Shown piece after piece: positions 19,250-41,759 of a DNA stretch of 64,000 bases. The stretch covers positions 177,415 to 241,414 of IMG/VR virus record IMGVR_UViG_3300009034_000001, one strand, 5' to 3'. Positions within the stretch are counted from its first letter, which is position 1. Every line of letters begins with the position of its first letter. Below the pieces are notes generated by a model, which searched no databases, was not told the DNA's origin, and saw only the letters and a list, made by a program, of their open reading frames with translations. The position numbers were made by a program, and so were the translations under genes.

Positions 19250-19582
19250 CTATCCAAAACAGACCTTCCTCATTAATGCTTTAAGTGCACATTTATTACC
19301 GCGTAACCTATAGTTCCAACCGGATAAAAACTTTCCTTTATGTACAATATTTAAACAACCATAACTATCAGAATCTGGTTGAGGCACAAGCTTCCAAAGT
19401 GGACAATTATTACAATACGGCCTAGTTCGCGGCGGCCACACACTAAAGTCTTTGTAAAATCCAGCATCGATACAAAGTTGGCAGGAATGGATGCCTCCAA
19501 AAATTACACTCTTTCTTTCTATGGTTGAACAAACAAGGTCAAATACTCTTTTTTGAGTCCAACGCTTCCTTTGGTTGAACAT
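19250..19582 (-). CDS. Family A paralog 1
   Basis: Likely start ATG 19582 with RBS; WT.KRV...CxxC...CxxCPLW...C...KG...GNK.ALKAL. Confidence 0.8.
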   Translation of the reverse strand: MFNQRKRWTQKRVFDLVCSTIERKSVIFGGIHSCQLCIDAGFYKDFSVWPPRTRPYCNNCPLWKLVPQPDSDSYGCLNIVHKGKFLSGWNYRLRGNKCALKALMRKVCFG

Positions 19583-20048
19583 ACCTACGATACCTCCTTC
19601 TTTCTTTTCGAAGTGGCACAATCTTTTTAGAGAAAACGTAACAACGATACATATGTCCAAGTACTCTGTGAGGAACGCGTTTAACACGCATCACAATACA
19701 AACGAGTTTGAGTAAATCGATGTCTTCATAATCGTAAACATCGATACTTGGATTCACTTGTTGGTGTCCGCTACATGAAAATAAAGTGCCACAGCCCTGT
19801 TCACGGGCTCGCATTACAACGTCCCTGATTCCCGGGTCAATTTTGTCGTCAATAGCTGACGTCCAATAACTACGATAGTGTTTACGCTCGTTGTCAGAAT
19901 ACCTTTGGCATATATGATAACAAAAAGTTAATGATTTCAGCCTGTCATTGTGCACAATTGTTATAATTCTACATCGTTTGACGTCAACTGGACGATAACA
20001 AATGAAACACTGGGGCTCAACATTAATTATAATTTGTTCGTCGTGCAC
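19539..20048 (-). CDS. Protein with ID..I..V...T..SCSGH motif (TYW3-like N-terminus; paralog of 56445-56939)
   Basis: IDPGIRDVVMRAREQGCGTLFSCSGH. Confidence 0.45.
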   Translation of the reverse strand: MHDEQIIINVEPQCFICYRPVDVKRCRIITIVHNDRLKSLTFCYHICQRYSDNERKHYRSYWTSAIDDKIDPGIRDVVMRAREQGCGTLFSCSGHQQVNPSIDVYDYEDIDLLKLVCIVMRVKRVPHRVLGHMYRCYVFSKKIVPLRKERRRYRRYVQPKEALDSKKSI

Positions 20049-20375
20049 ACTTTCACTTCCTTGACTGATATCATATCTTCTGCTAACATCTCAATACAAT
20101 TCCAAAAGGTACTCAATGAACCACTACCTGTGGTCACTTTGTAATTGACTTTAGGTTCCGTGCAACAAACCTCAAACTCCCAGCATTGTGCTGGATAGCC
20201 AGTAATCCATATCTTTACTCGAGCCCCGGGAAAGACAACTTCGCCAAGAAAGTGCTTTTCGTGACATTTAATATCAAAAGGTTTTAGTCCAAGTTTTTTC
20301 AAAAGACCTAAATCCCACGAAAAAGGTGTTACCCTATCTAAGCAGTCCAACATATAATATCCCTCCTCCTTTGTA

Positions 20376-21110
20376 CTAACAATTACTTGGAATCAAATCC
20401 GGAAACTCCAGCTCCAAGAACGCTTTAACTCTAATCTTTAATCTAAGTTCCAGTTGCCTTATCCTTTCCCTTGAAAGTCCAAATTTATCTCCAATTGCTT
20501 GCAGTGTTTTTGGCTTTTCAGACATTAAACGATTTTCTAAGATATACCGGTCTCTACTTTTCAATGTTCTACGAAATGTAGCAAACTGTTTATTGAAAAA
20601 CTTTCTCTCATCGCGTTCAACAATCTTCAGGTCAGTAGACTTTTCTTCATCTATTACAAGGCCGATTTGAGCTTGCCGATCCGAAACCTCGAGCGAGTCA
20701 AGAGATACATCCCACTTTACATCTTCATTAATATCCGGCTTGGAAGGCCTAACTATACTCCGATTGTTTGCAATGAACCTCAACATCTTAGACTTAATCC
20801 AGAAGGAAGCGTAGTAAGAAAATTTCACTCCTCTAAATGGGTCAAACTTCTCCACAGCACGAATTAAACCCAAATTACCTTCTTGAATCAAATCTAAAAC
20901 GTTGATGCCAAACCTGTTATAGTATCCCAAAGCAATTTTTACCACTAGCCTCAAATTTGAAATCACTAATTTGTCCCTTGCACTAAGGTCATTACTTTTT
21001 GCATACCTCTTTGCAAGTTCCAGAACCTTTTCTGACGGTAATACTGGATTATGTTTTATCTCTGATAAATACAGCTGAAATGTCCTATTATGTATAGTTT
21101 CTGTAAACAT
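20376..21110 (-). CDS. RNA polymerase sigma-70-family factor, RpoH-like
   Basis: Region 1.2 YLSEI; region 2 SNLRLVVKIA...DLIQEGNLGLIRAVEKFDPFRGVKFSYYASFWI; region 4 TLQAIGDKFGLSRERIRQLE. Confidence 0.92.
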   Translation of the reverse strand: MFTETIHNRTFQLYLSEIKHNPVLPSEKVLELAKRYAKSNDLSARDKLVISNLRLVVKIALGYYNRFGINVLDLIQEGNLGLIRAVEKFDPFRGVKFSYYASFWIKSKMLRFIANNRSIVRPSKPDINEDVKWDVSLDSLEVSDRQAQIGLVIDEEKSTDLKIVERDERKFFNKQFATFRRTLKSRDRYILENRLMSEKPKTLQAIGDKFGLSRERIRQLELRLKIRVKAFLELEFPDLIPSNC

Positions 21111-22433
21111 TACTTATTAGCCATACCGGAGAGTTCCGGAAAAGACGTTCTATAATCTATGCGCATAGCTTGATGTAAAAACCGCTCCAATAACCGAATA
21201 GCAGCCTTTGGATTTTCTTGAATAAGCAAACTAAGTCGGTGTGTTATTTCCCAACAGTTGTTGCAAAGTCTAGTAGCGTGCAGAGCTTTTGGAGAGCCGC
21301 ATTCCTTACAGTAAAACGCCATCCCCCTTGGTATTGTTATTGGTGCCATACACTAACCCCCATTATAAAAGTTAACGGCATTACTTTCTTCGCCGCTCTG
21401 ATAGAACACAAGGGCTTGTCTTCTTGGTCTAAACATTTCAACTCTCACCAAAAGCTCAGGTCTGTCTTTACTTGCCCTATAAGCCTCATCAAGACACTGA
21501 TGCAAACTGGTATAATAGTGCCCTTGGCCTATCTCTACATATTCCCATCGCCACTCCACCATTACTTTTCCTCCTCTATCCTTCAAAAATTGTTTCAAAC
21601 ACTTCCTCCCACGGAGTCATAATATCGATAGACTTTGGTGGCCAACCTTCATTTGAATATACATTCAACGTTACGGACTCTCGACCACAATGTAAGCCGA
21701 AAGTAACATCACCATAACGCTCTTTTAGCGCTCTCTTAAGTTCTTCAAGTTTTTCTCGAAGGAACCAATCCCACTTGTTCAAATTTGGTTTATCTCTCCA
21801 ACTCATTCTTTCCTCCTTCATTACATTCCTCTTCCTTGTGTCTCTTAAGTATCCTTCTGGATAAAACAAATATGCCTAAACTCACCACAATAGCTATATA
21901 ACATATATATGTTACCAAGTTACCTAAAAATGCAAATTCCGTATGTTGAGTCATATCTCAGTACCTCCTAAACAATATCCTCATCAAAGTATTCAAAGTT
22001 TTCAGGATCGGAGCCGTACAATGTTCTCTTTAACTTCGCCTTAGCACTACAACCTTTTTCATCACAACTAACATTGTACATAATCTCAAGATATACACGA
22101 TTGACTTTGACCCAAGCCCTTGCGGATATAAGACCATTTGTAGTCCAGCAATGATTACACTGTTTTTTCATGAGACTCTCCCTTTACTGGATTTCTTCAA
22201 TTCCTGGAAACTTATTCAACATACCCAAATTATAAGTCACAGGCTCCGATTTAATAAGAACATGCATCTTGTAGAGGCCGTGTGGAACATCTTCAAATAT
22301 AAATTCTAACAGCCCAATCAGAACAAGGCCATTCTTCAACCTAACACTTATGGTTTTATCTGTTGTAAATCTCTTTAACATAAAAAGCCTCCTCGTTCCG
22401 AATGAGTAAATGAAAATTTATTTTTAATAATAT

Positions 22434-22487
22434 AATATACATATGTACCTTAACGAACTTCAAGGGGGTCCTTAAAATTTTTTTGTG
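22434..22487 (-). promoter_or_regulatory. Repeated early promoter, copy 3
   Basis: AT-rich UP element, GGACC-N3-TTGAAG-N18-TATATT. Confidence 0.8.
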
Positions 22488-22497
22488 CCTGTTCCTT

Positions 22498-22863
22498 CTA
22501 TTTACCTAAACAGACTTTTCTAGCTAATGCCTTTAAAGCACCCTTATTCTTATATAACTTCTTTTCCCAATCGGCCAACGTCACACCTTTATAAACAGCG
22601 GAAGTACATAAGCTACCAGTAAGCGATTTAAACCGAGACTCTGGATAAATATTCCAAAGAGGGCACCAAAAACACTTACTAGGCTTCCATTCGACCATGC
22701 AAGTGAATAACGTATTTGAGTCCTTACAGAGTTTACAAGCCTCTCCAAAGGGATGGCTAAAAAACATTCCATTGTATGTAATATTTTTCAGTACAAGCTC
22801 GTAAACACGTTGCTTTGTCCATCTTTTTGACTTTTTGATATCCAAATTTACCACCCCCTCCAA
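22498..22863 (-). CDS. Family A paralog 2
   Basis: CKLC...CFWCPLW...C..AVYKG...NKGALKALARKVCLG. Confidence 0.85.
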   Translation of the reverse strand: MEGVVNLDIKKSKRWTKQRVYELVLKNITYNGMFFSHPFGEACKLCKDSNTLFTCMVEWKPSKCFWCPLWNIYPESRFKSLTGSLCTSAVYKGVTLADWEKKLYKNKGALKALARKVCLGK

Positions 22864-23067
22864 GGAGACTTCCGTTCAAAATAAGCTATTTCAGCCTCCG
22901 TTGCTATAAGATGCCAAGTATATGGCATCAATCTTTCTATTTCACCCCAAGGGGAATCAATTTCATAAGCCTTATCTTCTGGCATACCGCATTTTTGAAT
23001 TAGCCAGTTGGTAGCCCATTCACCAAACCACTCCGGACTGTCACTCCAAACGCTCATAATACACCTC

Positions 23068-23385
23068 CTATCCTAGACAAACCTTTCTTGCTAACGCCCT
23101 TAATGCTCCACGATTTCCTTTAAGTCGATTCGTTATTTCACCTAGCCGTCTACCTTTATGTACATACAAACAACAAGCACTTTCAGAATCAGTATGAGGC
23201 AAATCAACAATATCCCTAAGTCGACAGTAGCCACAAAACTTCATAAACCTAAACGATTGAAAATCAGCTCGTTGTTTCGCGTCTATACAGAGCGGGCAGT
23301 CATTGGGAGCACTAAAGAATATACCGTACTTTTCAATATTGTTCAAAACAATCTTTAAGATATCCTCACGCGTATAACTACTCAT
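23068..23385 (-). CDS. Family A paralog 3
   Basis: NIEKYG...CPLC...CGYC...C..VHKG...GNRGALRALARKVCLG. Confidence 0.85.
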   Translation of the reverse strand: MSSYTREDILKIVLNNIEKYGIFFSAPNDCPLCIDAKQRADFQSFRFMKFCGYCRLRDIVDLPHTDSESACCLYVHKGRRLGEITNRLKGNRGALRALARKVCLG

Positions 23386-23640
23386 AATAAGCCCCCATTT
23401 TTAAGATTGTCGTAATACTCTTTCATACAACCCTTGTCACTTGGACACAACCCCCAAGTATCAGCCCATTTTCCATACGACTCATAAGCAGGCAGTGTAA
23501 ATGACTCTTTCCAGAATCTTCCACATAGACCACACCAATAGTGGTCGTACTTAACAGAAGGACAACCTGTAAGGAGCCAAGATAACCTATCAAATATCCT
23601 CCTTAACATCTGACACCTCCATTTCACAATAATTTTCTAA

Positions 23641-24011
23641 CTATCTTGGAATAAAGATTTCATTACATACAAATACACGCAATTTTCGTTGCCAGCCCTT
23701 TGCAATCACCTTTCGTATCTTTACTTTCTTTATTACGGGACTTCGCGGATACGGGAAATGGGAGTAGCCCAACTACGTGCGTCGCGTAAAGTATAAAAAC
23801 AATGCCAGCCATTTTTATACTCCTTTCCGAGCCAATCATGTAAAAATTGTTTGGGTTGTCCCACTGAAAAATCCTTAGCACGCAACCACTTACCTAAAGG
23901 TCGTGTCTTGCAACCGTAGAATTCGCCATACAAGCCATTAGCCGAGTCCACAAAGACTTTATAACCATACTTTGGTCGATACAAAGACGTGTCAAGTTGT
24001 CGAAGACACAT
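23641..24011 (-). pseudogene. Family B paralog 4, frameshifted near 23765
   Basis: Frame 1 ends at IREVP*; the family C-terminus (KKVKIRKVIAKGWQ...VFVCNEIFIPR*) continues in the -1 frame. Confidence 0.75.
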
Positions 24012-24022
24012 TTAACCACCCC

Positions 24023-24331
24023 CTAACCTAAAAAGACCTTCCTTGCTAATGCTCTAAGTGCTCCCTTTTTTCCTCTTAATTGTGAAGAGATATTGCGTAA
24101 TGACTTGTTTTTATGTTGTATCAAACAACAATCGGCATTCTCCGGCATTGGATACAGATCCCACAGCGGACAATAGTAACAGGCCCCCGACGGATAATTT
24201 AAAACTTCACCTCGACGTGAGTCTGCTTCATGACAAGCTTCGCATGTAGAAGAATCACCATATATGTCTCCAAAATTCTCGATGTTCTTTAAAGCAAGTT
24301 GAAAAACTCTTTTCTTTGTCCACTTTTTCAC
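24023..24331 (-). CDS. Family A paralog 4
   Basis: WTKKRV...CEAC...CYYCPLW...GALRALARKVFLG. Confidence 0.85.
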   Translation of the reverse strand: MKKWTKKRVFQLALKNIENFGDIYGDSSTCEACHEADSRRGEVLNYPSGACYYCPLWDLYPMPENADCCLIQHKNKSLRNISSQLRGKKGALRALARKVFLG

Positions 24332-25011
24332 TTCCTTTCACCTCCTTCTAGAATTTTTTCTTGCACAAAACAATCATATTCAATTGTACTGCCAAATCCC
24401 TTGTCGTTTACCCAAAATATGAACATATAATCATTTTCCATGTACAATTCCCGAAACGATTTATAGTGTAACAACCTATGCTCAAGTGGTAGTGTAAGGT
24501 CAATAACTATCTCACTGCCAACACTAGTTACCATAACAGCCACCAGGTGACCCTCACCCGTACTTTCGGGATCGCCGCGTAAGATAGCTTTTAGTAGCGG
24601 TCTTTCCAATAGTAACAATATTCCTACTTGATGTTCCGGGAAAATATATTTTAATGAAGCACCTACGAACATAGCTGCATCTTCACAATCACCAACTAGT
24701 CCATCTTTAACCGTTTGACTAGGTGACTTCCACCCATCGTTTTTGGCCAACGCTAGGTCAGTGTCAACAACGTAAGTAAAAGCCTTCAACATTTCAGTAA
24801 GTTCTTGCCCTGTTTGTGGCCTCACTTTCTCAAATGTCACACGGTCATCTTCAATGATACTATGAACAAATACTTCAAAATCCGTTTGTAGTTTATCTAT
24901 TGGACTACGCACTGTTTCGGGTTCATAGCAGGATGCACCGGCGTCTAACATTATCCAACAAAGTGTAAATAAAATGAGGCATCTAATGGCTTTCATGTTC
25001 CTATTCTTCAA
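24328..25011 (-). CDS. Transglutaminase-like cysteine proteinase (BTLCP-like) with signal peptide
   Basis: Hydrophobic N-terminus; W.SP.QT...GDCED; GHLVAV; downstream D completing a Cys-His-Asp triad. Confidence 0.75.
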   Translation of the reverse strand: MKNRNMKAIRCLILFTLCWIMLDAGASCYEPETVRSPIDKLQTDFEVFVHSIIEDDRVTFEKVRPQTGQELTEMLKAFTYVVDTDLALAKNDGWKSPSQTVKDGLVGDCEDAAMFVGASLKYIFPEHQVGILLLLERPLLKAILRGDPESTGEGHLVAVMVTSVGSEIVIDLTLPLEHRLLHYKSFRELYMENDYMFIFWVNDKGFGSTIEYDCFVQEKILEGGERK

Positions 25012-25061
25012 TTTAATTTTGTTACAGTTACATTGTTATGTTTCCAAACACGTTTCCATAA

Positions 25062-25412
25062 CTAACCTAGACAGACTTTCCTTGCTAAAGCTCTAAGCGC
25101 CCCCTTGTTTTTGTTAAGGAACATTGACCACATTCCAAGACTTTTACCCTTGTACTTATAATTAGCACAGTAAAACTTACCACGTTGACTAACACTGGGA
25201 GGTCTAACAAGTTGCCAAATTGGACAATGGTCACATAGTGTAGTGCTTCCATACGTTCCGCTATTGTACCACAGATCTCTTGCATCATGACACAACTGAC
25301 AAGTGCGAACTAATCCAAAGAGTCCGCCTGTATCTTCAATATTTTGTAAAACTTGTTTATAAACTGCTTCACGCGGCCATTTCTCCATTATTAGCACCTC
25401 CTTTTCAATCAA
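25062..25412 (-). CDS. Family A paralog 5
   Basis: CQLC...CDHCPIW...C..YKYKG...NKGALRALARKVCLG. Confidence 0.85.
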   Translation of the reverse strand: MIEKEVLIMEKWPREAVYKQVLQNIEDTGGLFGLVRTCQLCHDARDLWYNSGTYGSTTLCDHCPIWQLVRPPSVSQRGKFYCANYKYKGKSLGMWSMFLNKNKGALRALARKVCLG

Positions 25413-26545: not shown

Positions 26546-27912
26546 AAAGAAACCTCCTTTATAGTTATTTCATCCTCTCACGCTTTTTGAATGTTATCAT
26601 CTTCGTCCACGAAGATTATTTCATCACATTCATCACCCAGATAGTGCATTCCACATTCTTCGTCATCACAAAGATGTATTCCGCTTGTTGGCGTGCTTCT
26701 CGTTGCAGGTTCCTCACAATAGGAGCACTTCGGAATTTCGCCTACTTCCCAGAGATACCCAGAACTTTCATAATGTCCAGCCATTTGACACCTCCTTCTT
26801 TCTACAGATGTTTTGCGAGTTCGTTATAAAACGTCACACTCGCTACTCCCCGACTGTCACCTATATAACGTTGACTGTAAGGTCTCATTGACTCGCCAAC
26901 GCCAACTTCAAACGTGCCGTCAGTAAACTCAATCAAACAAATAACCTCCTCCGCAAAGCCAAACTCGACCGTTAGTATATTTTCAACTTTTCGGTCTTCA
27001 ATAATACCTTTCCAACCATCGCCAATATTTTCCAATTCTTTGCCATATATCAGATATATTTCAAACTCCCTCATCTCACATCTCCTTATATGTTGCATTT
27101 AAACGTTAAAATTATTAGAAGATCCACCAAACAAATTTGACGCCTAATGCAACACATGCCCCCTTATAAGCCCACGCAAATGAATCTATCAAAAATCCTA
27201 ACACGTCACCTATTACTTCGCCAACATCAATGTTGTTGTTCATAATGTCATCCTCCCTTTAAGAATTCAATTGCCAAAATTGTTACTATTAACGCCCACA
27301 TGAGCCATGTCCATCTAATTCCAAATATCATAGATGCCTCCTCCACAAGTTATTTATTTCCCGTTTTTACCTGAACAGAAGTCATCTGCAAGCGTTGCAG
27401 CAATTTCAAACGAATAACCACTAATCTCTTCTACTTCATACTCTCCACGAACCTCCACTTGGTCCCCAGGTTCGGGTTTGTCGGATGAAAAGAAGAAGTA
27501 AGTTCTATCCTCGCAGACGTTTCCATTACTTTCTAACAAAGCGCATAAGTATATACGCATTGTGCTAATCCTCCTTCTATTTATTTCCTTTTTATAGCCA
27601 CGCCCATAGCCTTTGCTTCTCTTTCAAGAACCTCCGGATGAAACTGTGAAAAGTGTTCAATTACGGCACACCTTTCGCGTCTCTTAAGCGTTTTTCCGTT
27701 GGGACTTTTCATATCAAGTCGAATTCGGTAAGAAACATCTATCTTGACACCACATAAATTACAAGTGCCTTCCTTCCTGATAATCTCCGACCACTTGCTA
27801 TTAAGAGATCCACACCTCGGACATGCTGGTTCAGTTGAATCCTGCTCAAAATGTTGCTCCACACTTATGACAATACCATCTGGTCATTTCTCCTCCCTAG
27901 ATAGTTCAAAAA

Positions 27913-28158
27913 TTACCTAATTCGGCCTTTTTCAACAGCTGACTTAATTCTGGCCTTCTCGTAAAGTGTTCTCACTGCAGCTTCCAATCTAGTCATCGCA
28001 ATATGGTCAAAGAAACGCTCGTCGCATTTTGTGCACTCAATCCATTCAAGTCCACATATTCTTTCATTAACTTCAGGTAGTCTAAGTGGATAATTGCCCT
28101 CGCGGGCTACCATTTCCCCACCACAAAGCGGACAGACGGTGTTGACCAGTTTCTTCAC
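27913..28158 (-). CDS. YgiT-type zinc finger (MqsA antitoxin N-terminal-like), no HTH
   Basis: CPLCGGEM...I.GL....CTKCDERFFD.....RLE. Confidence 0.75.
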   Translation of the reverse strand: MKKLVNTVCPLCGGEMVAREGNYPLRLPEVNERICGLEWIECTKCDERFFDHIAMTRLEAAVRTLYEKARIKSAVEKGRIR

Positions 28159-28174
28159 TAATTAGTCACCTCCT

Positions 28175-28393
28175 TTATTTTCCACGATGACTGCGTTTAC
28201 TTGCCTTCAGAGGATTTATCATCTTACCAGTCTTTTTATCTTTAATAAGTGTCGGAGCCATTGGGCACCGTTCGCCTAAAGGATGTCCAGGCTCACGCCA
28301 TTTTCTCTCAGGATATAAATACACCTTACACTTCCCACCCTCAATATGAAGACAATCGTCATCAATACACCTCTGGATTATCTCACCGCCCAT
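28175..28393 (-). CDS. PxxKW-family cysteine-rich protein
   Basis: C..Y..PERKW....CPMA...K.INPLKASKR matches the PxxKW family pattern known from Desulfobacterota. Confidence 0.75.
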   Translation of the reverse strand: MGGEIIQRCIDDDCLHIEGGKCKVYLYPERKWREPGHPLGERCPMAPTLIKDKKTGKMINPLKASKRSHRGK

Positions 28394-28655: not shown

Positions 28656-29006
28656 CTATTTCAATATTTTGACAGCTAACGCTCTAAGTGCGCCTTTATT
28701 GCCGTGTAACTTACTATCCAATTCAGTCAGACGTTTACCTTTATGTAAATAATTGACACATTGGTTAGAACTACCCTTCAACTCCAAAGGTTGTTTGAAA
28801 ATATTCCACAGAGGACACAAATCACAAACATCCTCGTCAATATCCAAGGTTAAATAACGTGTCCACCTTTCATCCTCCGCCTCGTGGCACATTTTACACG
28901 GAACACTATACATAGAGCCATAACTCTCGATGTTGCCAAATACCAATCTTAATACTCTACTTTTTGTAAACTTCGGCCTTCTCCTTCTGGGAAACATAAA
29001 CATCAC
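28656..29006 (-). CDS. Family A paralog 6
   Basis: NIESYGS...CKMC...CDLCPLW...C.NYLHKG...GNKGALRAL. Confidence 0.85.
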   Translation of the reverse strand: MMFMFPRRRRPKFTKSRVLRLVFGNIESYGSMYSVPCKMCHEAEDERWTRYLTLDIDEDVCDLCPLWNIFKQPLELKGSSNQCVNYLHKGKRLTELDSKLHGNKGALRALAVKILK

Positions 29007-29150: not shown

Positions 29151-29498
29151 TTAGCCCGACAATATTTTAGTAGCAACCGCTTTTAGTGCCCCTTTGTTAG
29201 GAAACAAAAGCTCATCCCAGGTGGATAACGATCTGCCTTTATATCGATATTCATAACATTGACCCTCAGTGCCTTTCAAATCCCTAGGTTGTGATAGTAC
29301 ATCCCATAACGGACAGTAATCACAATGACAAGAGTCTATTCCAAGAAGAGAGCCGGGTGGGTTATATATGTCGATATTGGGATAGCGCTTCGTTGATGCA
29401 CGGCACAATGCACAACCGCAGCCAAAAAAGGATTTATGTTGATCGATATTACGATACACTAACTGAAGTATTTTGTCCTTAGTCCACTTCCTTGGCAT
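29151..29498 (-). CDS. Family A paralog 7
   Basis: CALC...CDYCPLW...C..YRYKG...NKGALKAV. Confidence 0.85.
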   Translation of the reverse strand: MPRKWTKDKILQLVYRNIDQHKSFFGCGCALCRASTKRYPNIDIYNPPGSLLGIDSCHCDYCPLWDVLSQPRDLKGTEGQCYEYRYKGRSLSTWDELLFPNKGALKAVATKILSG

Positions 29499-29514
29499 TT
29501 AAACTTTCACCTCC

Positions 29515-29832
29515 TTAACTATCCTTCTTTGTTAAGTTGTTAACTAACGCAAGCAATAATGCTCGTAGTGCAGGTTTATTGTTACGTAATTTAGAATCCA
29601 AACTATGCAAGATTTTGCCTTTATATTTAATATTTGCGCAATCCGACATATATGGAATCGACTGTTTTAAATACCTCCAAAGTGGACAGACGTCACACTG
29701 GGAGTGGTCAAAACCAGCATGTTCCTCGGCTTCAACACAAAGTAGGCAAGTAAACGGATCTCCATATAAAGAGCCATCGCGTTCAATGTTACGCTCGACG
29801 CACCTTATAATAGATTTCTTCGATAGCTTCAT
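29515..29832 (-). CDS. Family A paralog 8
   Basis: KKSIIRCVERNIE...CLLC...CDVCPLW...C.NIKYKG...NKPALRALL. Confidence 0.85.
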   Translation of the reverse strand: MKLSKKSIIRCVERNIERDGSLYGDPFTCLLCVEAEEHAGFDHSQCDVCPLWRYLKQSIPYMSDCANIKYKGKILHSLDSKLRNNKPALRALLLALVNNLTKKDS

Positions 29833-29847: not shown

Positions 29848-30171
29848 TTAGCTAAAGTGATTAATAAGTCCCCTTAACAACGCCAGTAACGCCGGCTTAT
29901 TTCCCCTTAGCTTTTTATTATGAACCCAAAGCGGGTTACCTTTATATCGTATAATAGAACAGCCGCTTTCAGCATCCGTACGACAGCCCAATTCCGGCAT
30001 TGTCACATAATCCCACAACGGACAGAAATTACACTTATAAGCAGAAAGATGTCCACGCCTGTTAAAAGCAATACTACAAAGTAAACAGTTAAAACGACTA
30101 AACAAAGAACCATGCATTTTAATGTTTCGCTCGACGAAATTTATAAGGTTTTCCTTTGAAATCTTATGCAT
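29848..30171 (-). CDS. Family A paralog 9
   Basis: CLLC...CNFCPLW...C..IRYKG...GNKPALLALL. Confidence 0.85.
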   Translation of the reverse strand: MHKISKENLINFVERNIKMHGSLFSRFNCLLCSIAFNRRGHLSAYKCNFCPLWDYVTMPELGCRTDAESGCSIIRYKGNPLWVHNKKLRGNKPALLALLRGLINHFS

Positions 30172-30588: not shown

Positions 30589-31017
30589 TTATTTAACTGT
30601 ATCTGCAACCTGTTTCTCTATAAAAATCTGTTTACATACAGTAACACTATGACTTTCCATGCCACTAAATGTGCTGAAACATTGATTCCCAACACAAACT
30701 GGTTCTTTTACCCTTACCCTCCAAATCTCGTGATTATGGTCGTATCCAAAACGTCCTTTCTGTTTTAGTCGAGCCTTTACATCCTTCAAACTATGGTAAA
30801 CATGAAAACCTCGAAGATAACACGTACGACCTTCATCTCTTAAGGATATTGTTTCCTTACGAAAATTACCAATGTAATCTTTTTCATGTAACCATTGGTG
30901 TCTAGGCCTAACTTTACTTCTGTTTATAAATTCGCCATAAAGTTTACCGTTTATCCGAGCAAAAACCTTATAACCTTGCTTCACTGGCCGTTTATTTGTC
31001 ACTACAGATAAACACAT
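30589..31017 (-). CDS. Family B paralog 5
   Basis: MCLS...GYKVF...GKLYGE...RP..WLHEKDY...GFHVYH...VTVCKQIFI. Confidence 0.85.
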   Translation of the reverse strand: MCLSVVTNKRPVKQGYKVFARINGKLYGEFINRSKVRPRHQWLHEKDYIGNFRKETISLRDEGRTCYLRGFHVYHSLKDVKARLKQKGRFGYDHNHEIWRVRVKEPVCVGNQCFSTFSGMESHSVTVCKQIFIEKQVADTVK

Positions 31018-31050: not shown

Positions 31051-31494
31051 CTACTTCTTATATACAGGAATTCGTTCTTCTATAAAAATCTGCTTACAAA
31101 CCGTAACATTTTGCCTCACCATTTCACCACCCATATGAAGGCGATAGTTTTGAACCCCATTACAAGTAGGCTCTTTTATCTTAACCTTCCATATTTCGTA
31201 ACTACCTCTACGCGCTTCGTAGGGGTAAGTCATTTTCCGACGAAGTCGAGCCTTGGCATCCTTCAAACTATGGTATACATGAAAACCCATAAGGTACTTA
31301 TGAAAACCTCTATCTCTTAAGAACATTATATCCTCCCAATAGCTATCTCTGTAGTCTTTTTCATGTAACCACCGGCGTTTTGGTCTAACCTGTTCGTTAC
31401 TTACATATTCTCCATACAGTTTGCCATGAAGCTGAAAGAAGATCTTGTAACCTTGTTTCACCGATCTTCTATTTATTACGGTTGATAAACACAT
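31051..31494 (-). CDS. Family B paralog 6 (tandem duplicate of paralog 5)
   Basis: Same motifs; identical 26-nt RBS/start junction at about 31008-31032 and 31484-31509. Confidence 0.85.
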   Translation of the reverse strand: MCLSTVINRRSVKQGYKIFFQLHGKLYGEYVSNEQVRPKRRWLHEKDYRDSYWEDIMFLRDRGFHKYLMGFHVYHSLKDAKARLRRKMTYPYEARRGSYEIWKVKIKEPTCNGVQNYRLHMGGEMVRQNVTVCKQIFIEERIPVYKK

Positions 31495-34410: not shown

Positions 34411-34734
34411 TTATTTCTTGGCCCCCTTCGAATAGAAATTTATTAAACCTCTTAAAAACGCTCGTAGCGCAGGTTTATTTCCTTCCAACCTACTTTCAAT
34501 AGTAAACACAGCTTCTCCCTTGTATTTCAGGTGGCTACAAGCGGCTTCCAAACCGCAAAACTTTGGTTTTGGTAAATAATCCCATAATGGACAGTACTTA
34601 CATGTAAAATATTCCGTGGGAGACGTTCTCTTGTCAGCCTCAATACAAAGTTTACAGCTATGTAAACCTCCACTGAATGAGCCATATTTCTCGATGTTAT
34701 TTTTTATAAACTGAATAATTGTTGACTTCTTCAT
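34411..34734 (-). CDS. Family A paralog 10
   Basis: Family motifs; first of a 7-gene tandem array. Confidence 0.9.
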   Translation of the reverse strand: MKKSTIIQFIKNNIEKYGSFSGGLHSCKLCIEADKRTSPTEYFTCKYCPLWDYLPKPKFCGLEAACSHLKYKGEAVFTIESRLEGNKPALRAFLRGLINFYSKGAKK

Positions 34735-35063
34735 TTATGTCTTCCTCCTTTATTTTTATACTCGTTGATGAGTCCATTTAACATTGCACGTAGTGCAGGT
34801 TTATTTCCTGTCAACCTGGAATCCAACACAACCAACTTTTCTCCTTTATATTTAAGATTAAAACATTCGGCCCCATAATGTTCAAACTCTGGTTTTGGCG
34901 CGTAATCCCATAGTGGACAAACTTGACATACATCACGGACATCACGAAACAGCAACTTCGCTTCAGCTTCTCTACAAAATATGCAACCACGACGACCGCC
35001 CCAAAGGGAACCACTTTTCTCTATATTACCTCTTAAAAACCGAATAATGGTTGACTTCCTCAT
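34731..35063 (-). CDS. Family A paralog 11
   Basis: Family motifs. Confidence 0.9.
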   Translation of the reverse strand: MRKSTIIRFLRGNIEKSGSLWGGRRGCIFCREAEAKLLFRDVRDVCQVCPLWDYAPKPEFEHYGAECFNLKYKGEKLVVLDSRLTGNKPALRAMLNGLINEYKNKGGRHK

Positions 35064-35067
35064 TTAT

Positions 35068-35382
35068 TTAATCCTCCTTGTCAAAATGTTTAATTAGTCC
35101 ATTTAATAAAGCTCGAAGTGCCGGTTTGTTTCCTTCCAACCTCATTTCAATCTCAAACAACGCTTTTCCATTATACTTAAGATTTGCACAGCTAGCTTGA
35201 TAACTACGACACTTTGGTTTTGGTATATAATCCCATAGTGGACAGACCTTGCATGCAAGCCAATCCGGTGGGGACATCCTCTTTTGAGCCTCGGCACAAA
35301 GTTTACAGTTAGATAAATTACAAAATGAGCCATATTTCTCAATATTATTTTTTACAAACCGAATAATGGTTGACTTTCTCAT
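35068..35382 (-). CDS. Family A paralog 12
   Basis: Family motifs. Confidence 0.9.
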   Translation of the reverse strand: MRKSTIIRFVKNNIEKYGSFCNLSNCKLCAEAQKRMSPPDWLACKVCPLWDYIPKPKCRSYQASCANLKYNGKALFEIEMRLEGNKPALRALLNGLIKHFDKED

Positions 35383-35386
35383 TTAT

Positions 35387-35719
35387 TTAATCCTCCTTGT
35401 CAAAATGCTTAATTAGTCCATTTAATAAAGCTCGAAGTGCCGGTTTGTTTCCACGCAACTTGAAATCAATCGTATTCAATGTTTCCCCTTTATAACTAAT
35501 CCACCCACAGCTATATTCATTAGTTGGTATGTAATCCCACAGAGGACAAGCAACACACCTACACCTGCCATAATGGTAGGTATTATTAGGATCAAACCTT
35601 TTATCAGCCTCCCAACAAAGCATGCATCCACAGCTCAATTCAAATGCTTTCCTGCAGAATAACGAGCCATACCTCTCAATATTATTCTTAACAAATCGAA
35701 TAATGGTTGACTTCCTCAT
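35387..35719 (-). CDS. Family A paralog 13
   Basis: Family motifs. Confidence 0.9.
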   Translation of the reverse strand: MRKSTIIRFVKNNIERYGSLFCRKAFELSCGCMLCWEADKRFDPNNTYHYGRCRCVACPLWDYIPTNEYSCGWISYKGETLNTIDFKLRGNKPALRALLNGLIKHFDKED

Positions 35720-35723
35720 TTAT

Positions 35724-36035
35724 TTAATCCTCCTTGCCAAAGTGATTAACTAACCCATTTAACAATGCTCGAAGTGCTGGTTTGTTTCCAGCCAACTTGT
35801 TTTCCCAAACTAGTAACGGTTCTCCTTTATAACTAATCCACCCGCAGGCAGGCGTAATATCACACTTTGGTTTTGATATGAAATCCCATAGTGAACAAAC
35901 TTCACAGATATTACAAAACGCGGGCTTCCTCAATTTAGCTTCTGCGCAAAGTATACAATCACTCAATCCACCAAAGAGGGAACCACGACTTTCGATGTTT
36001 CCTTTTACATACCGAATAATTGTTGCCTCCTTCAT
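35724..36035 (-). CDS. Family A paralog 14
   Basis: Family motifs. Confidence 0.9.
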   Translation of the reverse strand: MKEATIIRYVKGNIESRGSLFGGLSDCILCAEAKLRKPAFCNICEVCSLWDFISKPKCDITPACGWISYKGEPLLVWENKLAGNKPALRALLNGLVNHFGKED

Positions 36036-36352
36036 TATTTTCTCCCTTTACTAGCCAAATTGACCAATCCATTCAACACCGCGCGTAATGCTGGTTTGTT
36101 TCCTTCCAATCTCATATCCAACACGCACAATCTTTCGCCTTTGTATTTAATCTTGCCACATGGGGATTCAAAACCTTCATACTTTGGTTTTGGAAAATAA
36201 TCCCATAATGAACATGCATCACAGGAATTCCAAAATAAAGCTTTCCGCTTTTTTGCTTCGTTACAAAGTACGCAACCAACTGTGCCACCGAAGAGAGAGC
36301 CATAACTCTCGATGTTTTCTTTCACACATAGAATAATTGTTGATTTTTTCAT
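36035..36352 (-). CDS. Family A paralog 15
   Basis: Family motifs. Confidence 0.9.
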   Translation of the reverse strand: MKKSTIILCVKENIESYGSLFGGTVGCVLCNEAKKRKALFWNSCDACSLWDYFPKPKYEGFESPCGKIKYKGERLCVLDMRLEGNKPALRAVLNGLVNLASKGRK

Positions 36353-36684
36353 CTACTAAGTCCTCCTTTATTAAACGAGTTGACAACCCCATTTAACAAC
36401 GCACGCAGTGCGGGTTTGTTTCCTTTGAGAGTGTCACTCCAATAAGCTAGCCTCATCCCTTTATACAATATATCCTCGCAGTAAGGACTTATATTACCTA
36501 TCAAAACAGGGTCACTTATATAATCCCACAGGGGACAGAAACTGCACTTTGGTGTCAGTCCCGAGGTTTTTGCACGGCGCGCTGAAGCTACCAAACAAAT
36601 TTTACAAATAGACGCGAGCCCGTATAAAGAGCCATGTGTATTGATGTTTTTCTCAACACACCTTATAATTGATTTCAGGTTCAT
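36349..36684 (-). CDS. Family A paralog 16
   Basis: Family motifs. Confidence 0.9.
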   Translation of the reverse strand: MNLKSIIRCVEKNINTHGSLYGLASICKICLVASARRAKTSGLTPKCSFCPLWDYISDPVLIGNISPYCEDILYKGMRLAYWSDTLKGNKPALRALLNGVVNSFNKGGLSR

Positions 36685-36898: not shown

Positions 36899-37129
36899 TC
36901 AATGCCCTATACGAAAAGTCTTTCTTAAAATAATTGAGACTCTCACCAATAAACTTAGATGTCTAGCCTTCCATTCAGCACTTAGTTTCCTCCAACTACA
37001 ATGGAGACAAAAGTCTTCTGGATAACCTACCCGAATAGTGCCAGAACAGACTGGACAAGCTCTAAATAACTTATATATCTCGACCTTGCCTTCTTTAGCT
37101 ACCAACGTGGACCCTCTACGTTTGGCCAA
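36899..37129 (-). CDS. Zn-ribbon protein (paralog of 48601-48807)
   Basis: CPVCSG....GYPEDFCLHCSW. Confidence 0.65.
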   Translation of the reverse strand: MAKRRGSTLVAKEGKVEIYKLFRACPVCSGTIRVGYPEDFCLHCSWRKLSAEWKARHLSLLVRVSIILRKTFRIGH

Positions 37130-38071: not shown

Positions 38072-38275
38072 TTAATAGCCTCCACGCTCTAAAGCATCAG
38101 CACATTCATTGCACTGATAACCTTTGGCTACATCCAATGGAGTAAGTCGATTTGGTTTTCCACAATTAGGACACGGATGTTTCCTTGGATTCTTCTTTGT
38201 AGCTGCACGAAGAGCACTTCCTCCGCCCGGATCCGCAAAGCCAACCCCGTCAATGAGCATCTCTTCATCATGCAT
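38072..38275 (-). CDS. Conserved phage Zn-ribbon protein
   Basis: FADPGG.SALRAA...PCPNCG..NRLT..D...GYQC..CAD. Confidence 0.6.
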   Translation of the reverse strand: MHDEEMLIDGVGFADPGGGSALRAATKKNPRKHPCPNCGKPNRLTPLDVAKGYQCNECADALERGGY

Positions 38276-40146: not shown

Positions 40147-40455
40147 CTAACCAAAGTAATTATCTAATCCCTTTAGTAGTGCTCGTAGTGCTGGTCTATT
40201 TCCAGCTAGCCTAGAGTTCAAGACATGAAGATTCTTACCTTTGTATTTAATCTGATCACATCCACAAATATACGTTGGCCACTCTGGTCGAGGCATGTGG
40301 TCCCACAGGGGACACCACGCACAACTTGAGCCACAACTTGTGCCTTTCCTAGCCATGGCAACATCACACAATGCACAATCGAGCGGATGCCCATACAAAG
40401 AGCCATGGTTCGAGATGTTATTCCTTAAAAAACGAATAATCGCTGTCTTATTCAT
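40147..40455 (-). CDS. Family A paralog 17
   Basis: Family motifs; first of a 5-gene tandem array. Confidence 0.9.
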   Translation of the reverse strand: MNKTAIIRFLRNNISNHGSLYGHPLDCALCDVAMARKGTSCGSSCAWCPLWDHMPRPEWPTYICGCDQIKYKGKNLHVLNSRLAGNRPALRALLKGLDNYFG

Positions 40456-40781
40456 TTCTTTATTTCCTCCTTACCAAAACGCGTAATTAATCCATTCAAG
40501 AGTGCACGTAGTGCTGGTCTATTTCCAACTAGAATACAATCAATCGCCAACAAAGACCTTCCCTTATATACAATCCCAGAGCAGCTATAATTACTAGTAG
40601 GTATGTAATCCCACAACGGACAATCCATACAAGTTCCCTCATAGACATCAGGGTCAAAGTCGGGGTTAAACCGCTTATCGGCCTCTTTACAAATCACACA
40701 ACCCGCCATTTCCTTACTGAACAACGAGCCATACTCTTCAATATTCCTCTTGACACATCTTATAATGGTTGTCTTCTTCAT
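40452..40781 (-). CDS. Family A paralog 18
   Basis: Family motifs. Confidence 0.9.
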   Translation of the reverse strand: MKKTTIIRCVKRNIEEYGSLFSKEMAGCVICKEADKRFNPDFDPDVYEGTCMDCPLWDYIPTSNYSCSGIVYKGRSLLAIDCILVGNRPALRALLNGLITRFGKEEIKK

Positions 40782-41098
40782 CTTTTTATTTCCTCCTTGC
40801 CAAAGTAATTAACTAATCCATTTAGCAGCGCTCGTAGTGCTGGTTTGTTTCCACGCAATCTATGCTCAAATTTGTACAGAGTTGTTCCTTTATGCCAAAT
40901 ATCTGCACAATCGGCTCTGTGACCCGGTGGTTTTGGCATGATATCCCATAATTGACAGTTATTACATTCAGATGTACCCAGTGAAGTTTTCCGCTTTTCT
41001 GCTTCCTTACACAAAACACAATTAAACGGGTCGCCATATAAAGAGCCATACGTCTCAATATTACGTTTTACAAGGCTAATAATAACTGACTTCTTCAT
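40778..41098 (-). CDS. Family A paralog 19
   Basis: Family motifs. Confidence 0.9.
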   Translation of the reverse strand: MKKSVIISLVKRNIETYGSLYGDPFNCVLCKEAEKRKTSLGTSECNNCQLWDIMPKPPGHRADCADIWHKGTTLYKFEHRLRGNKPALRALLNGLVNYFGKEEIKR

Positions 41099-41424
41099 TT
41101 ATTAAGTCCTCCTTTTTCAAACAAGTTGATAACCCCATTTAACAATGCTCGTAGTGCTGGTTTGTTTCCTTCCAGCTCGGAATCAATCGAAATCAACGGT
41201 TTCCCTTTATACCTAATCCACCCACAGCTATTATCACTAGTAGATATGTAATCCCACAGAGGACAAGCAACACACCTACACCTGCCATAATGGTGGGAAT
41301 TATTAGGGTTAAATCTTTTACCTGCCACATCACAAAGTGCACAGGTTGTAAGTTTATCACTAAATAACGAGCCATACTTCTCGATATTCCTCTTGACACA
41401 TCTTATAATGACTGACTTCTTCAT
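41095..41424 (-). CDS. Family A paralog 20
   Basis: Family motifs. Confidence 0.9.
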   Translation of the reverse strand: MKKSVIIRCVKRNIEKYGSLFSDKLTTCALCDVAGKRFNPNNSHHYGRCRCVACPLWDYISTSDNSCGWIRYKGKPLISIDSELEGNKPALRALLNGVINLFEKGGLNK

Positions 41425-41759
41425 TTGTTTAATTCTCCTTTATTAAAAGCGTTGATAAGTCCATTTAATAACGCTCGAAGAGCTGGTTTATTGCCATTCA
41501 AGAAGTAATCAGAAGCAAAAAGTTTTGCTCCTTTGTAGAGAATGTCAGAACATTCTGAATACCTACCAGATGGTCTTGTTATGTGATTCCACAATGGACA
41601 GAGGTCACATTCAAGTACCATTTCGAAAACCTTCCAATCCGTTTGAGAAGCACGCTTTTGTGCTCCCTTACAAAGAATGCAATCATCTGGAATTCCGTAT
41701 AACGACCCATACTTCTCAATATTCCTTTTGATGCATCTTATAATAGCTGAAACCTTCAT
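41421..41759 (-). CDS. Family A paralog 21
   Basis: Family motifs. Confidence 0.9.
   Translation of the reverse strand: MKVSAIIRCIKRNIEKYGSLYGIPDDCILCKGAQKRASQTDWKVFEMVLECDLCPLWNHITRPSGRYSECSDILYKGAKLFASDYFLNGNKPALRALLNGLINAFNKGELNK

What the first reader, a model, noticed from the sequence alone, without database searches (positions are those of the whole stretch)
19250..41759. Family A: 21 paralogs of an unknown five-cysteine protein with conserved ends and a hypervariable core
Seen: 21 ORFs of about 100-120 aa with consensus K.T(I)I..V..NIE.YGS...CxxCxxA-(variable)-CxxCPLW(D)Y-(variable)-C..I.YKG..L.....L.GNKPALRAL. They occur as singletons (19-25 kb), a 4-gene group (28.6-30.2 kb), a 7-gene array (34.4-36.7 kb) and a 5-gene array (40.1-41.8 kb). 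Subtypes follow position: the WT.KRV/ALARKV.LG type lies on the left and the KSTII/ALL.GL.N type on the right, with intermediates near 29 kb. All copies are intact despite strong divergence. Inference: a Zn- or Fe-S-stabilised scaffold displaying variable loops, i.e. a diversified binder repertoire against variable host targets (anti-defence or host takeover). This is the strongest candidate for an undescribed system in the window.
Basis: partly seen in the sequence, partly recalled or inferred. Interest (0 to 1): 0.88.

Follow-up and report, generated by a model that had tools for sequence, protein, structure and literature searches.

The report
Private 21-copy five-cysteine phage protein family
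One uncultured 241-kb phage, probably of sulfate-reducing bacteria, carries 21 intact, old copies of a small five-cysteine protein that has no relative in any public database and no known fold; the copies keep a common scaffold, vary in two loops and swap their cores by recombination, but what they do is still only inferred.

Summary
A profile search finds exactly 21 intact paralogs (102-121 aa, minus strand, window 19250-41759) and no fragments. All have C-x2-C-x13-26-C-x2-C-x12-20-C, and nearly all have a strong ribosome-binding site.

The family is private to this phage. An exhaustive profile search of 1.84 billion representative proteins, a word-indexed search of the 5.8-billion-cluster collection, and scans of GenBank phages and of viral, metagenome and genome contigs return only this contig's own genes. 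Pfam, PHROGs, NCBIfam, PADLOC and PDB sequences give nothing significant. Two confident AlphaFold models (pLDDT 85 and 89) match nothing in PDB or BFVD.

The copies are old: synonymous sites are saturated. The scaffold is under purifying selection. The two loops are unconstrained, so positive selection cannot be shown.

New here: the genes are mosaics. A13 has the ends of its neighbour A12 and the core of A20, in the other array (p about 1e-13). The conserved ends therefore also act as recombination sites.

Twenty copies lie between two copies of a sigma-70-like promoter element.

Best reading (confidence about 0.4): a metal-stabilised, basic helical scaffold presents variable loops as a repertoire of specific binders made early in infection. 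The targets, protein or nucleic acid, are unknown.

The parts
19250..19582 (-). A01, left-clade paralog (110 aa); the ORF could extend to the GTG at 19687, but the ATG at 19582 has GAAGGAGG upstream
22498..22863 (-). A02, left-clade paralog (start uncertain, 118-121 aa); lies immediately upstream of the promoter-like element at 22464
23068..23385 (-). A03, left-clade paralog (105 aa); the only copy with CRLRD instead of CPLWD
24023..24331 (-). A04, left-clade paralog (102 aa); modelled with pLDDT 88.9, pTM 0.79
25062..25412 (-). A05, left-clade paralog (108-116 aa)
28656..29006 (-). A06, left-clade paralog (116 aa), last gene of the 4-gene group
29151..29498 (-). A07, left-clade paralog (115 aa); longest loop 1 (26 aa); extra Cys two residues before both CxxC motifs
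29515..29832 (-). A08, right-clade paralog (105 aa)
29848..30171 (-). A09, right-clade paralog (107 aa), first gene of the 4-gene group
34411..36684 (-). 7-gene array A16 to A10 in the direction of transcription (36349-36684, 36035-36352, 35724-36035, 35387-35719, 35068-35382, 34731-35063, 34411-34734). Genes overlap by 4 nt (ATGA) or 1 nt, or are 4 nt apart. The ribosome-binding site of each next gene lies in the tail codons (KGG/KED) of the gene before it
40147..41759 (-). 5-gene array A21 to A17 (41421-41759, 41095-41424, 40778-41098, 40452-40781, 40147-40455); all junctions are ATGA overlaps
35528..35577 (-). 50-nt tract in the core of A13 that is identical to 41245-41294 in A20; it marks the centre of the exchanged core cassette (alignment columns 52-114)
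35090..35133 (-). 44-nt tract in the 3' part of A12 that is identical to 35409-35452 in A13; homogenisation of junctions between neighbours
41756..41998 (-). 80-aa protein with two CxxC motifs whose stop overlaps the A21 start (ATGA); probably the first gene of the unit that contains the 5-gene array. No family match
42286..42341 (-). Conserved promoter-like element (A/T-rich upstream part, CTTGAAGT, 16 nt, TATATTAT; that is TTGAAG, 17 nt, TATATT as counted) upstream of the block that holds A21 to A02
22432..22488 (-). Next copy of the same promoter-like element, just downstream of A02; it opens the block that holds the phage sigma factor and A01

Best explanation
Family A is a multigene family found only in one jumbo phage: contig IMGVR_UViG_3300009034_000001, 241 kb. 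The host is probably a member of the Desulfobacterota. Each gene encodes a small (about 105 aa), basic, cytoplasmic, mostly helical protein. The conserved N-terminal helix, the YKG hairpin and the long C-terminal helix form a common scaffold. The two CxxC motifs, with the fifth Cys nearby or also taking part, are inferred to hold a metal ion: Zn, or Fe as in rubredoxin-type centres. That metal site would tie down the bases of two loops that are free to change in sequence and length. The family grew by tandem duplication long ago. Every copy has since been kept open and translatable, so each is individually useful. The copies still exchange core cassettes by homologous recombination through their conserved ends. 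Twenty of the 21 genes lie in one roughly 20-kb block of small genes behind a sigma-70-like promoter element. They are tightly packed and partly translationally coupled, so they are probably made together early in infection. The most likely function is a repertoire of specificity variants on one scaffold. Each variant would bind a different target, host proteins such as defence or housekeeping factors, or nucleic acids, through its loops. The conserved basic face would give a shared property. Shown: the family's existence, its privacy to this phage, its intactness, the Cys pattern, the scaffold/loop split, the mosaicism, the ribosome-binding sites and the gene packing. Inferred: metal binding, early expression, binding function and targets.
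For: There are 21 copies and no fragments. Only the contig's own genes are found among 1.84e9 representative proteins, the word-indexed 5.8e9-cluster collection, GenBank phages, IMG/VR, JGI metagenome contigs and GTDB species genomes. There is no significant Pfam, PHROGs, NCBIfam, PADLOC or PDB-sequence match. Two models from different clades agree in topology and are confident (pLDDT 84.9 and 88.9; pTM 0.76 and 0.79). Neither has a Foldseek match with E<=0.001, and TM-scores are 0.27 or lower. No conserved His, Asp, Glu or Ser is present; the only invariant reactive residues are the 5 Cys. The scaffold has pN 0.16-0.33 against a saturated pS of 0.6-0.8, while the loops have pN 0.56-0.73 plus indels. 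About 5.8% of single-base changes in these genes would create a stop codon. At the observed divergence, neutral copies would therefore not stay open. AGGAGG-type sites lie 5-9 nt upstream of nearly all starts (A02 and A05 unclear), and ATGA overlaps link genes in the arrays. Mosaic genes: A13 matches A12 at 37 of 47 informative sites in the ends, and matches A20 at 43 of 46 in the core (Fisher p 3e-13, about 5e-6 after correcting for all partitions and triplets). Exact shared tracts of 50 and 44 nt compare with a median of 10 nt. The promoter-like element occurs six times on the gene strand, and A02-A21 lie between the copies at 42317 and 22464. Phage and host context: a sigma factor about 40% identical to Desulfobacterota sigma factors; and, just outside the window, a GH108 endolysin, RNA ligase, PTPS and L27.
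Against: There is no evidence that any copy binds anything. Loop pN/pS near 1 at saturation fits plain lack of constraint as well as it fits diversifying selection, and among the closest pairs loop dN/dS is mostly below 1 (0.44-0.9), with two noisy exceptions. There is no relative in another phage, so copy-number turnover, the usual hallmark of arms-race families, cannot be seen; the second strain in the sample is identical across these genes. The generic sigma-70 scan found no more promoter-like sites than in shuffled sequence, so timing rests on one repeated element only. A uniformly basic scaffold points towards nucleic acids as much as towards proteins.
Confidence: 0.4

Rival explanations
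1. The proteins are nucleic-acid-binding metal-finger proteins. The conserved basic scaffold contacts the DNA or RNA backbone and the variable loops set sequence or structure specificity. This would give the phage a set of regulators, or blockers of host or competitor nucleic acids, much as clustered C2H2 zinc-finger genes diversify their contact residues.
For: All 21 have pI 8.5-9.8 and net charge +2.4 to +12.6. Outside the loops, K+R make up 19.6% against 7.3% for D+E, while the loops are near neutral. Cys knuckles are common in small phage DNA-binding proteins (established knowledge). The weak scattered Pfam hits are all to zinc fingers of nucleic-acid-related proteins, such as Spt4, PHD and zf-CW, but with E>0.01.
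Against: Half of the other small proteins in this window are also basic (median pI 8.5). Part of the charge sits in the KK start and in the KGG/KEE tails, which are dictated by the ribosome-binding site of the next gene. There is no match to any known DNA- or RNA-binding fold. Twenty-one different regulators in one phage would have no precedent.
Confidence: 0.25
2. The proteins are virion-associated or injected internal proteins. The conserved N-terminal helix would be a packaging signal and the variable body a set of payloads, by analogy with the polymorphic internal proteins of T4-type phages.
For: The proteins are small and basic, the N-terminus is conserved, and there are many variants. 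The T4 internal-protein analogy comes from established knowledge and was not tested here.
Against: The genes sit in a block of tiny genes together with a sigma factor, behind sigma-70-like promoters, not among structural genes. The C-terminal helix is as conserved as the N-terminus, unlike a leader-plus-payload design. No (L/I)-x-E protease site of the T4 type lies at a fixed position (read directly from alignment A1).
Confidence: 0.08
3. The proteins are redox-active thiol proteins. The CxxC motifs would cycle between dithiol and disulfide, as in Ero1/Erv-type or thioredoxin-type sites, rather than bind metal.
For: Both CxxC motifs sit at predicted helix N-termini. A profile search of PDB sequences gives its best, non-significant hit (E 0.08) to the Ero1 active-site stretch C-x-x-C-x-L-W.
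Against: The E-value is not significant. Foldseek finds no Ero1, Erv or thioredoxin fold. There are no conserved FAD-binding residues. A catalytic role does not explain 21 copies with free loops.
Confidence: 0.05
4. The array is a by-product of a recombination-prone repeat. The copies persist because duplication and conversion outrun decay, and most have no individual function.
For: Recombination between copies is demonstrated. The loops show no measurable constraint.
Against: Synonymous sites are saturated, yet all 21 reading frames, all five Cys and the scaffold residues are intact, nearly all ribosome-binding sites are present, and no fragment exists. Only two conversion tracts are evident, too few to rescue 21 genes.
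Confidence: 0.05

Closest known systems
Lineage-specific multigene families of large DNA viruses and jumbo phages (for example the ASFV MGF families and poxvirus ankyrin/PRANC genes; established knowledge)
   Same: Many tandem, diverged, intact paralogs lie in a terminal accessory arm of a large viral genome. The arm also holds other paralog families of 7, 6 and 4 copies. In those systems host interaction is the presumed role.
   Different: There is no sequence or fold relationship to any of them. This is a bacteriophage, the proteins are only about 105 aa, and they are built around five Cys. A family of 21 copies is, to my knowledge, very large for a phage.
Rubredoxin-type / zinc-ribbon metal knuckles (C-x2-C ... 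C-x2-C)
   Same: Two CxxC motifs are separated by a loop of variable length, and the protein is a small cytoplasmic protein of an anaerobe-associated genome.
   Different: Both knuckles are predicted to lead into helices within a helical bundle, not into a beta ribbon. There is an invariant fifth Cys. No Pfam zinc-ribbon or rubredoxin model matches.
Tandem polyimmunity loci of polymorphic toxin systems (for example the SUKH and Imm families; PMC3113570, PMC3482391)
   Same: These are tandem arrays of diverged paralogous proteins of about 100 aa that act as specific binders, with evidence of cassette recombination, and some were recruited by DNA viruses.
   Different: There is no homology to any immunity family in Pfam. 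No toxin gene or toxin-cassette context is present in the window.
Clustered C2H2 zinc-finger genes of animals (for example KRAB-ZFP clusters; established knowledge)
   Same: A metal-stabilised conserved scaffold carries variable specificity positions, in tandem clusters shaped by duplication and gene conversion.
   Different: The fold, the ligand set (no His) and the domain of life all differ. Here each protein is a single module rather than an array of fingers within one protein.
Zinc-binding anti-sigma factors (ZAS, for example RsrA)
   Same: They are helical cytoplasmic proteins of about 100 aa with several Cys including a CxxC; a phage sigma factor gene lies among the left-hand copies.
   Different: There is no H-x3-C-x2-C motif and no conserved His. 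No zf-HC2 Pfam hit was found, and there is no fold match to anti-sigma structures in the PDB.

Membership tests
Any curated protein family (Pfam-A, PHROGs, NCBIfam, PADLOC) | A profile match at or above the family threshold, shared by several members | tested here: not met
   No family is hit by more than one of the 21 members. The best hit is a single sub-threshold match to DUF6600 (E 1e-4) in one member that was not identified.
Zinc ribbon / rubredoxin-like | Two CxxC knuckles | tested here: met
   C-x2-C-x13-26-C-x2-C is invariant in all 21.
Zinc ribbon / rubredoxin-like | Knuckles carried on beta hairpins (ribbon fold) and a match to family profiles | tested here: not met
   Both knuckles precede predicted helices. 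There are no zinc-ribbon or rubredoxin Pfam hits and no Foldseek match.
Zinc ribbon / rubredoxin-like | Bound Zn or Fe | not testable with these tools
   This needs metal analysis of purified protein, or at least model coordinates to measure S-S distances.
ZAS anti-sigma factors | H-x3-C-x2-C motif in an anti-sigma helical domain | tested here: not met
   There is no conserved His, no zf-HC2 hit and no fold match in the PDB.
Ero1/Erv sulfhydryl oxidases | FAD-binding helical bundle with an active-site CxxC | tested here: not met
   There is only a motif-level PDB sequence hit with E 0.08-0.17. Foldseek does not recover Ero1 or Erv.
DGR (diversity-generating retroelement) target proteins | A reverse transcriptase gene plus a template/variable repeat pair that differs at adenines | tested here: not met
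   None of the five ORFs of 200 aa or more in the window is a reverse transcriptase. Repeats are only paralog-level. Copies differ throughout and by indels. The other 177 kb of the contig was not examined.
RiPP precursor families with many copies (prochlorosin-like) | A conserved leader followed by a short hypervariable C-terminal core, with a maturase nearby | tested here: not met
   The C-terminal 35-40 residues are the most conserved part and are predicted as a stable helix. The variable parts are internal loops. A radical SAM gene lies at the window's left edge, more than 19 kb away.
Polyimmunity / SUKH-type immunity arrays | Homology to an immunity family and linkage to toxin cassettes | tested here: not met
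   There is no Pfam hit, and no toxin domain was seen among the neighbours that were scanned.
Viral multigene families (as a kind, not a homologous family) | Many diverged, intact, clustered paralogs in an accessory arm of a large viral genome | tested here: met

The most novel reading that the evidence does not exclude
This would be a new metal-stabilised protein fold that a jumbo phage of sulfate-reducing bacteria uses as a built-in library of binders. Twenty-one loop variants on one scaffold are made together early in infection. New specificities arise by swapping core cassettes between copies through the conserved gene ends. That would be a phage counterpart of germline-encoded receptor repertoires, aimed at variable host defences or at competing elements.
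Probability: 0.2. Interest if true: 0.85.

Novelty: new variant of a known kind. Interest (0 to 1): 0.62.

Why it matters
Phage genomes rarely keep more than a few paralogs of anything. Here 21 old copies are all intact, so each copy appears to earn its keep, which points to an unusually broad set of targets for one protein design. The protein has no relative among about 15 billion predicted proteins and no fold match, so it is also a candidate new small metal-binding fold. It could be useful as a compact loop-display scaffold. It comes from phages of anaerobic sulfate reducers, a group that has hardly been studied. If the binder reading is right, it would show that phages can build diversity by duplication plus cassette exchange as well as by diversity-generating retroelements. 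If it is wrong, the family is still a clean natural example of concerted evolution at gene junctions with free cores.

Tried and rejected
1. Ero1 lead. The PDB profile search gave C-x-x-C-x-L-W of Ero1 as its best hit (E 0.08). I rejected it: the hit is not significant and has no fold support.

2. One member hits Pfam DUF6600 at E 1e-4. Fifteen members scanned singly did not show it, so I did not pursue it. It is a single sub-threshold hit and says nothing about the family.

3. dN/dS for diversifying selection. Nei-Gojobori counts by region show pS of 0.6-0.8 everywhere, that is, saturation. Loop pN/pS near 1 is therefore uninformative. Loop values for the closest pairs rest on 9-14 synonymous sites and scatter from 0.44 to 4.6. 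No claim is made in either direction.

4. Strain microdiversity and copy-number variation. Four further contigs of the same sample cover the arm but are 99.98-100% identical to the window. Their three differences lie outside family A. This gave no information.

5. The generic sigma-70 promoter scan gave fewer sites than in shuffled sequence, and terminator-like sites inside genes are unconvincing. Only the six-copy conserved element was kept.

6. Max-chi-square recombination signals that involve very distant 'parents' such as A01 or A02 were discounted as artefacts of rate differences between ends and core. Only reciprocal patterns (A13/A12/A20 and A12/A10/A13) were accepted.

7. Correlated extra Cys two residues before both CxxC motifs occur in A07 and A13. 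This hints that the two knuckles are neighbours, but two cases and one exception (A20) are too few.

8. Literature searches for the sample identifiers and for similar phage families found nothing relevant.

9. The first genome-contig scan, with the full alignment, failed for lack of a conserved stretch. I repeated it with the right clade only.

10. Alternative-frame ORF 'families' inside the arrays are shadows of the DNA similarity, not genes.

Full report
**Source and context.** The window is the last 64 kb (positions 177415-241414) of a 241,415-bp contig, IMGVR_UViG_3300009034_000001, also known as JGI Ga0115863_1000006. GC content is about 0.39. GC skew is strongly negative throughout, and nearly all genes are on the minus strand. 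Only five ORFs reach 200 aa, so the arm is a dense run of about 190 small genes.

Just left of the window the contig carries typical phage genes:
- a GH108 endolysin with a PG_binding_3 domain;
- RNA ligase, PTPS, a PDDEXK nuclease, ribosomal protein L27 and a radical SAM enzyme.

A sigma factor inside the window (20376-21110) is about 40% identical to sigma factors of Desulfatiglandaceae, Desulfobacteraceae, Thermodesulforhabdus and Desulfocarbo. The element is therefore best read as a jumbo phage, probably of a sulfate-reducing member of the Desulfobacterota. The host assignment is an inference. No close relative of the phage was found in GenBank phages or IMG/VR.

**The observation.** All 21 ORFs are present as described. 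A profile built from them recovers exactly these 21 from a six-frame translation, with E-values of 2e-41 to 3.5e-33. The next hit has E 0.44, even when stop-to-stop pieces as short as 12 aa are included, so no decayed copies exist.

- Five Cys are invariant, with spacing C-x2-C-x(13-26)-C-x2-C-x(12-20)-C-x(33-43).
- A maximum-likelihood tree separates A01-A07 (19.2-29.5 kb, ending ALARKVCLG or similar) from A08-A21 (29.5-41.8 kb, ending ALRALLNGLxN) with 100/99 support.

**Are they genes?** An AGGAGG-type ribosome-binding site lies 5-9 nt upstream of nearly all starts; the starts of A02 and A05 are uncertain and lack a clear one. Within the arrays, neighbouring genes overlap by ATGA or by 1 nt, or are 4 nt apart. 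In the arrays, the ribosome-binding site of the next gene is encoded by the tail codons of the previous one: K-G-G, K-E-E or K-E-D corresponds to AAGGAGG. This explains why the short C-terminal tails look conserved.

Synonymous differences are saturated (pS 0.6-0.8) in every part of the gene. About 5.8% of single-base changes in these genes would create a stop codon. My rough calculation is that a neutral copy would then have collected several stops. Twenty-one open frames with all five Cys intact therefore mean that each copy is kept by selection.

**How far does the family reach?**
- An exhaustive profile search of 1.84 billion representative proteins returned 15 hits. Thirteen are encoded in this window (verified). 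The other two are long Cys/Asp repeat proteins matched in many short stretches, which I treat as artefacts.
- The word-indexed search of the 5.8-billion-cluster collection returned only the contig's own proteins.
- GenBank phages, IMG/VR, JGI metagenome contigs and one genome for each of 185,579 species gave no relative.
- Pfam, PHROGs, NCBIfam, PADLOC and PDB sequences gave no significant or recurrent hit.

On present data the family is private to this phage.

**Structure.** AlphaFold2 models were built from the alignment of the 21 paralogs for one right-clade member (A12: pLDDT 84.9, pTM 0.76) and one left-clade member (A04: pLDDT 88.9, pTM 0.79). Both give the same order of elements:
- an N-terminal helix;
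- a loop, then the first CxxC leading into a helix;
- variable loop 1;
- the second CxxC in two short helical turns (CPLWDY);
- variable loop 2;
- the fifth Cys, then a short YKG hairpin;
- two C-terminal helices.

Confidence is highest (90 or more) in the conserved ends and lowest in the loops. Foldseek found nothing in the PDB or in BFVD for either model (best E about 2-7, TM 0.27 or lower). AlphaFold DB was not available, so 'new fold' is provisional. I had no access to coordinates, so the geometry of the Cys cluster is untested.

**What the sequence says about function.**
- No His, Asp, Glu or Ser is conserved. The only invariant reactive residues are the five Cys, which argues for a structural metal site or redox chemistry rather than catalysis.
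- There is no signal peptide or membrane segment (read directly from the sequences).
- All 21 proteins are basic, with pI 8.5-9.8. The charge sits in the scaffold (K+R 19.6% against D+E 7.3%), while the loops are near neutral and rich in Pro, Ser and aromatic residues.
- The background is also fairly basic (median pI 8.5), so this is suggestive only.

**Evolution.**
- Scaffold segments have pN 0.16-0.33. The two loops have pN 0.56-0.73, as high as the saturated pS, and they also vary in length.
- Because of saturation, and because the loops cannot be aligned reliably, positive selection cannot be told apart from absence of constraint. Loop estimates for the closest pairs rest on about 10 synonymous sites and scatter widely.

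The new finding is mosaicism. A13 agrees with its neighbour A12 at 37 of 47 informative sites in the two ends. It agrees with A20, 5.7 kb away in the other array, at 43 of 46 sites in the core (alignment columns 52-114). The Fisher p-value is 3e-13, and about 5e-6 after correcting for all partitions and all 3,990 triplets.

A12 likewise matches A13 at 24 of 24 informative sites in its ends, nearly all of them at the 3' end, and mostly matches A10 in between. Exact shared tracts of 50 nt (35528-35577 = 41245-41294) and 44 nt (35090-35133 = 35409-35452) stand against a median of 10 nt. Successive junctions in the 7-gene array are 94% identical over 118 nt.

The conserved ends are therefore also recombination substrates, and cores move as cassettes. 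Conservation of the ends is thus partly concerted evolution, not only protein-level constraint.

**Transcription context.** A 33-nt element recurs six times, always on the gene strand. It has an A/T-rich upstream part, then CTTGARGT, a spacer of about 16-17 nt (17-18 nt between the TTGARG and TATATT hexamers), and TATATTAT. The copies are at 55725, 54265, 42317, 22464, 18479 and 10661. It looks like a strong sigma-70-type promoter with an UP element.

A21 to A02 all lie between the copies at 42317 and 22464. The next block holds the phage sigma factor and A01. Early, host-polymerase-driven expression is a reasonable inference, but it has not been shown. The generic promoter scan was not enriched.

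**Interpretation.**
- I put the descriptive core at high confidence (about 0.9): a phage-private, selectively maintained, recombining multigene family of small Cys5 helical proteins with a conserved basic scaffold and two free loops.
- The metal site is probable (about 0.7), given the rubredoxin/zinc-ribbon-type motif pair in a cytoplasmic protein from an anaerobe's phage.
- The functional reading, a repertoire of target-specific binders made early for host takeover or counter-defence, gets about 0.4.
- Nucleic-acid binding is the main rival (0.25). Minor rivals are virion internal proteins, redox proteins and functionless repeats.

**Comparison with known systems.** As a kind, this is closest to the multigene families of large DNA viruses and to tandem polyimmunity arrays (PMC3113570, PMC3482391). 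In design it recalls clustered zinc-finger genes. It is not a member of any of these: every homology and fold test was negative. I rate it a new variant of a known kind (a viral paralog expansion) built on an apparently new protein family.

**Limits.** There is one genome from one sample. There is no expression data and no structure coordinates. AlphaFold DB could not be searched, and 177 kb of the contig was examined only in part. A motif scan of the viral collection, which includes this contig, found no further copies outside the window.

Noticed in passing
window 42485-46222 (-): A second tandem paralog family of seven genes of about 100-135 aa (42485, 42850, 43207, 43593, 45245, 45587, 45917) lies directly upstream of the promoter element at 42317. 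The one member scanned had no Pfam hit.
   Followed up: partly
window 5064-5474, 7378-7764, 10133-10555, 23733-24011, 30589-31017, 31051-31494 (-): A six-copy family (N-terminus MCLS..., with GYKVF and GKLYGEF motifs) has three members lying 12 to about 900 nt from family A genes: one immediately downstream of A04 and two upstream of A09. The two members scanned had no Pfam or PHROGs hit.
   Followed up: partly
window 12689-13429, 53589-53930, 57678-58148, 58274-58726 (-): A four-copy paralog family, plus several two-copy families, show that the whole 64-kb arm is unusually rich in private paralogs.
   Followed up: no
window 55694-55749, 54257-54289, 42286-42341, 22432-22488, 18447-18503, 10629-10685 (-): A conserved element recurs six times (A/T-rich tract, GGTCCC, CTTGARGT, spacer, TATATTAT), always on the gene strand and in intergenic gaps. 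It is probably a phage early promoter with an UP element.
   Followed up: partly
window 20376-21110 (-): A short phage sigma factor (244 aa, with regions 2 and 4 only in Pfam) has its nearest relatives, at about 40% identity, among the longer sigma-70/sigma-32-type factors of Desulfobacterota. This is the only clue to the host.
   Followed up: partly
window 61342-61983 (-): An isochorismatase-family protein (Pfam E 6e-44), possibly a nicotinamidase-type auxiliary gene.
   Followed up: no
window 12170-12246 (-): A single tRNA-Glu (anticodon TTC), the only Rfam or ARAGORN hit in the window.
   Followed up: yes
window, 17 ORFs, e.g. 21110-21349, 27581-27862, 27913-28158, 36899-37129, 41756-41998 (-): Seventeen other small proteins carry two or more CxxC motifs. 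One (27913-28158) has weak DUF1272 and Lar-like hits. A neighbouring small protein, 28175-28393, which is not one of the seventeen, has a sub-threshold DUF6811 hit. The arm as a whole is rich in Cys-knuckle proteins.
   Followed up: partly
window 24328-25011 (-): A 227-aa protein with a lipoprotein-like N-terminus and a GDCEDAA motif that recalls transglutaminase-like cysteine proteases. This is from memory and untested, and Pfam found nothing. Its stop overlaps the start of A04.
   Followed up: no
L004, L006, L007, L009, L011 (same sample): A second, nearly identical strain is assembled as one 173-kb contig that stops near the start of the paralog-rich arm (about 4 kb before the window) plus four short contigs across the arm. 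Only 3 base differences were seen in about 39 kb compared (window 4631, 31921, 34387). Why the assembly is fragmented here was not determined.
   Followed up: partly
L010 10481-20339 (contig 161-171 kb, left of the window): Genes for ornithine cyclodeaminase-like, PTPS (queuosine-type pathway), ribosomal protein L27, RNA ligase, PDDEXK nuclease and a GH108 endolysin. In strain contig L006 there are also DMP19 (DNA-mimic) and YAcAr domain proteins, within the part that corresponds to window positions about 9.6-11.6 kb.
   Followed up: no
window 34527-34685, 34811-35014, 35142-35342, 36112-36303, 40822-41058 (-): Out-of-frame ORFs inside family A genes cluster as 'families' in an all-against-all BLAST. 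They are shadows of the DNA similarity, not genes.
   Followed up: yes
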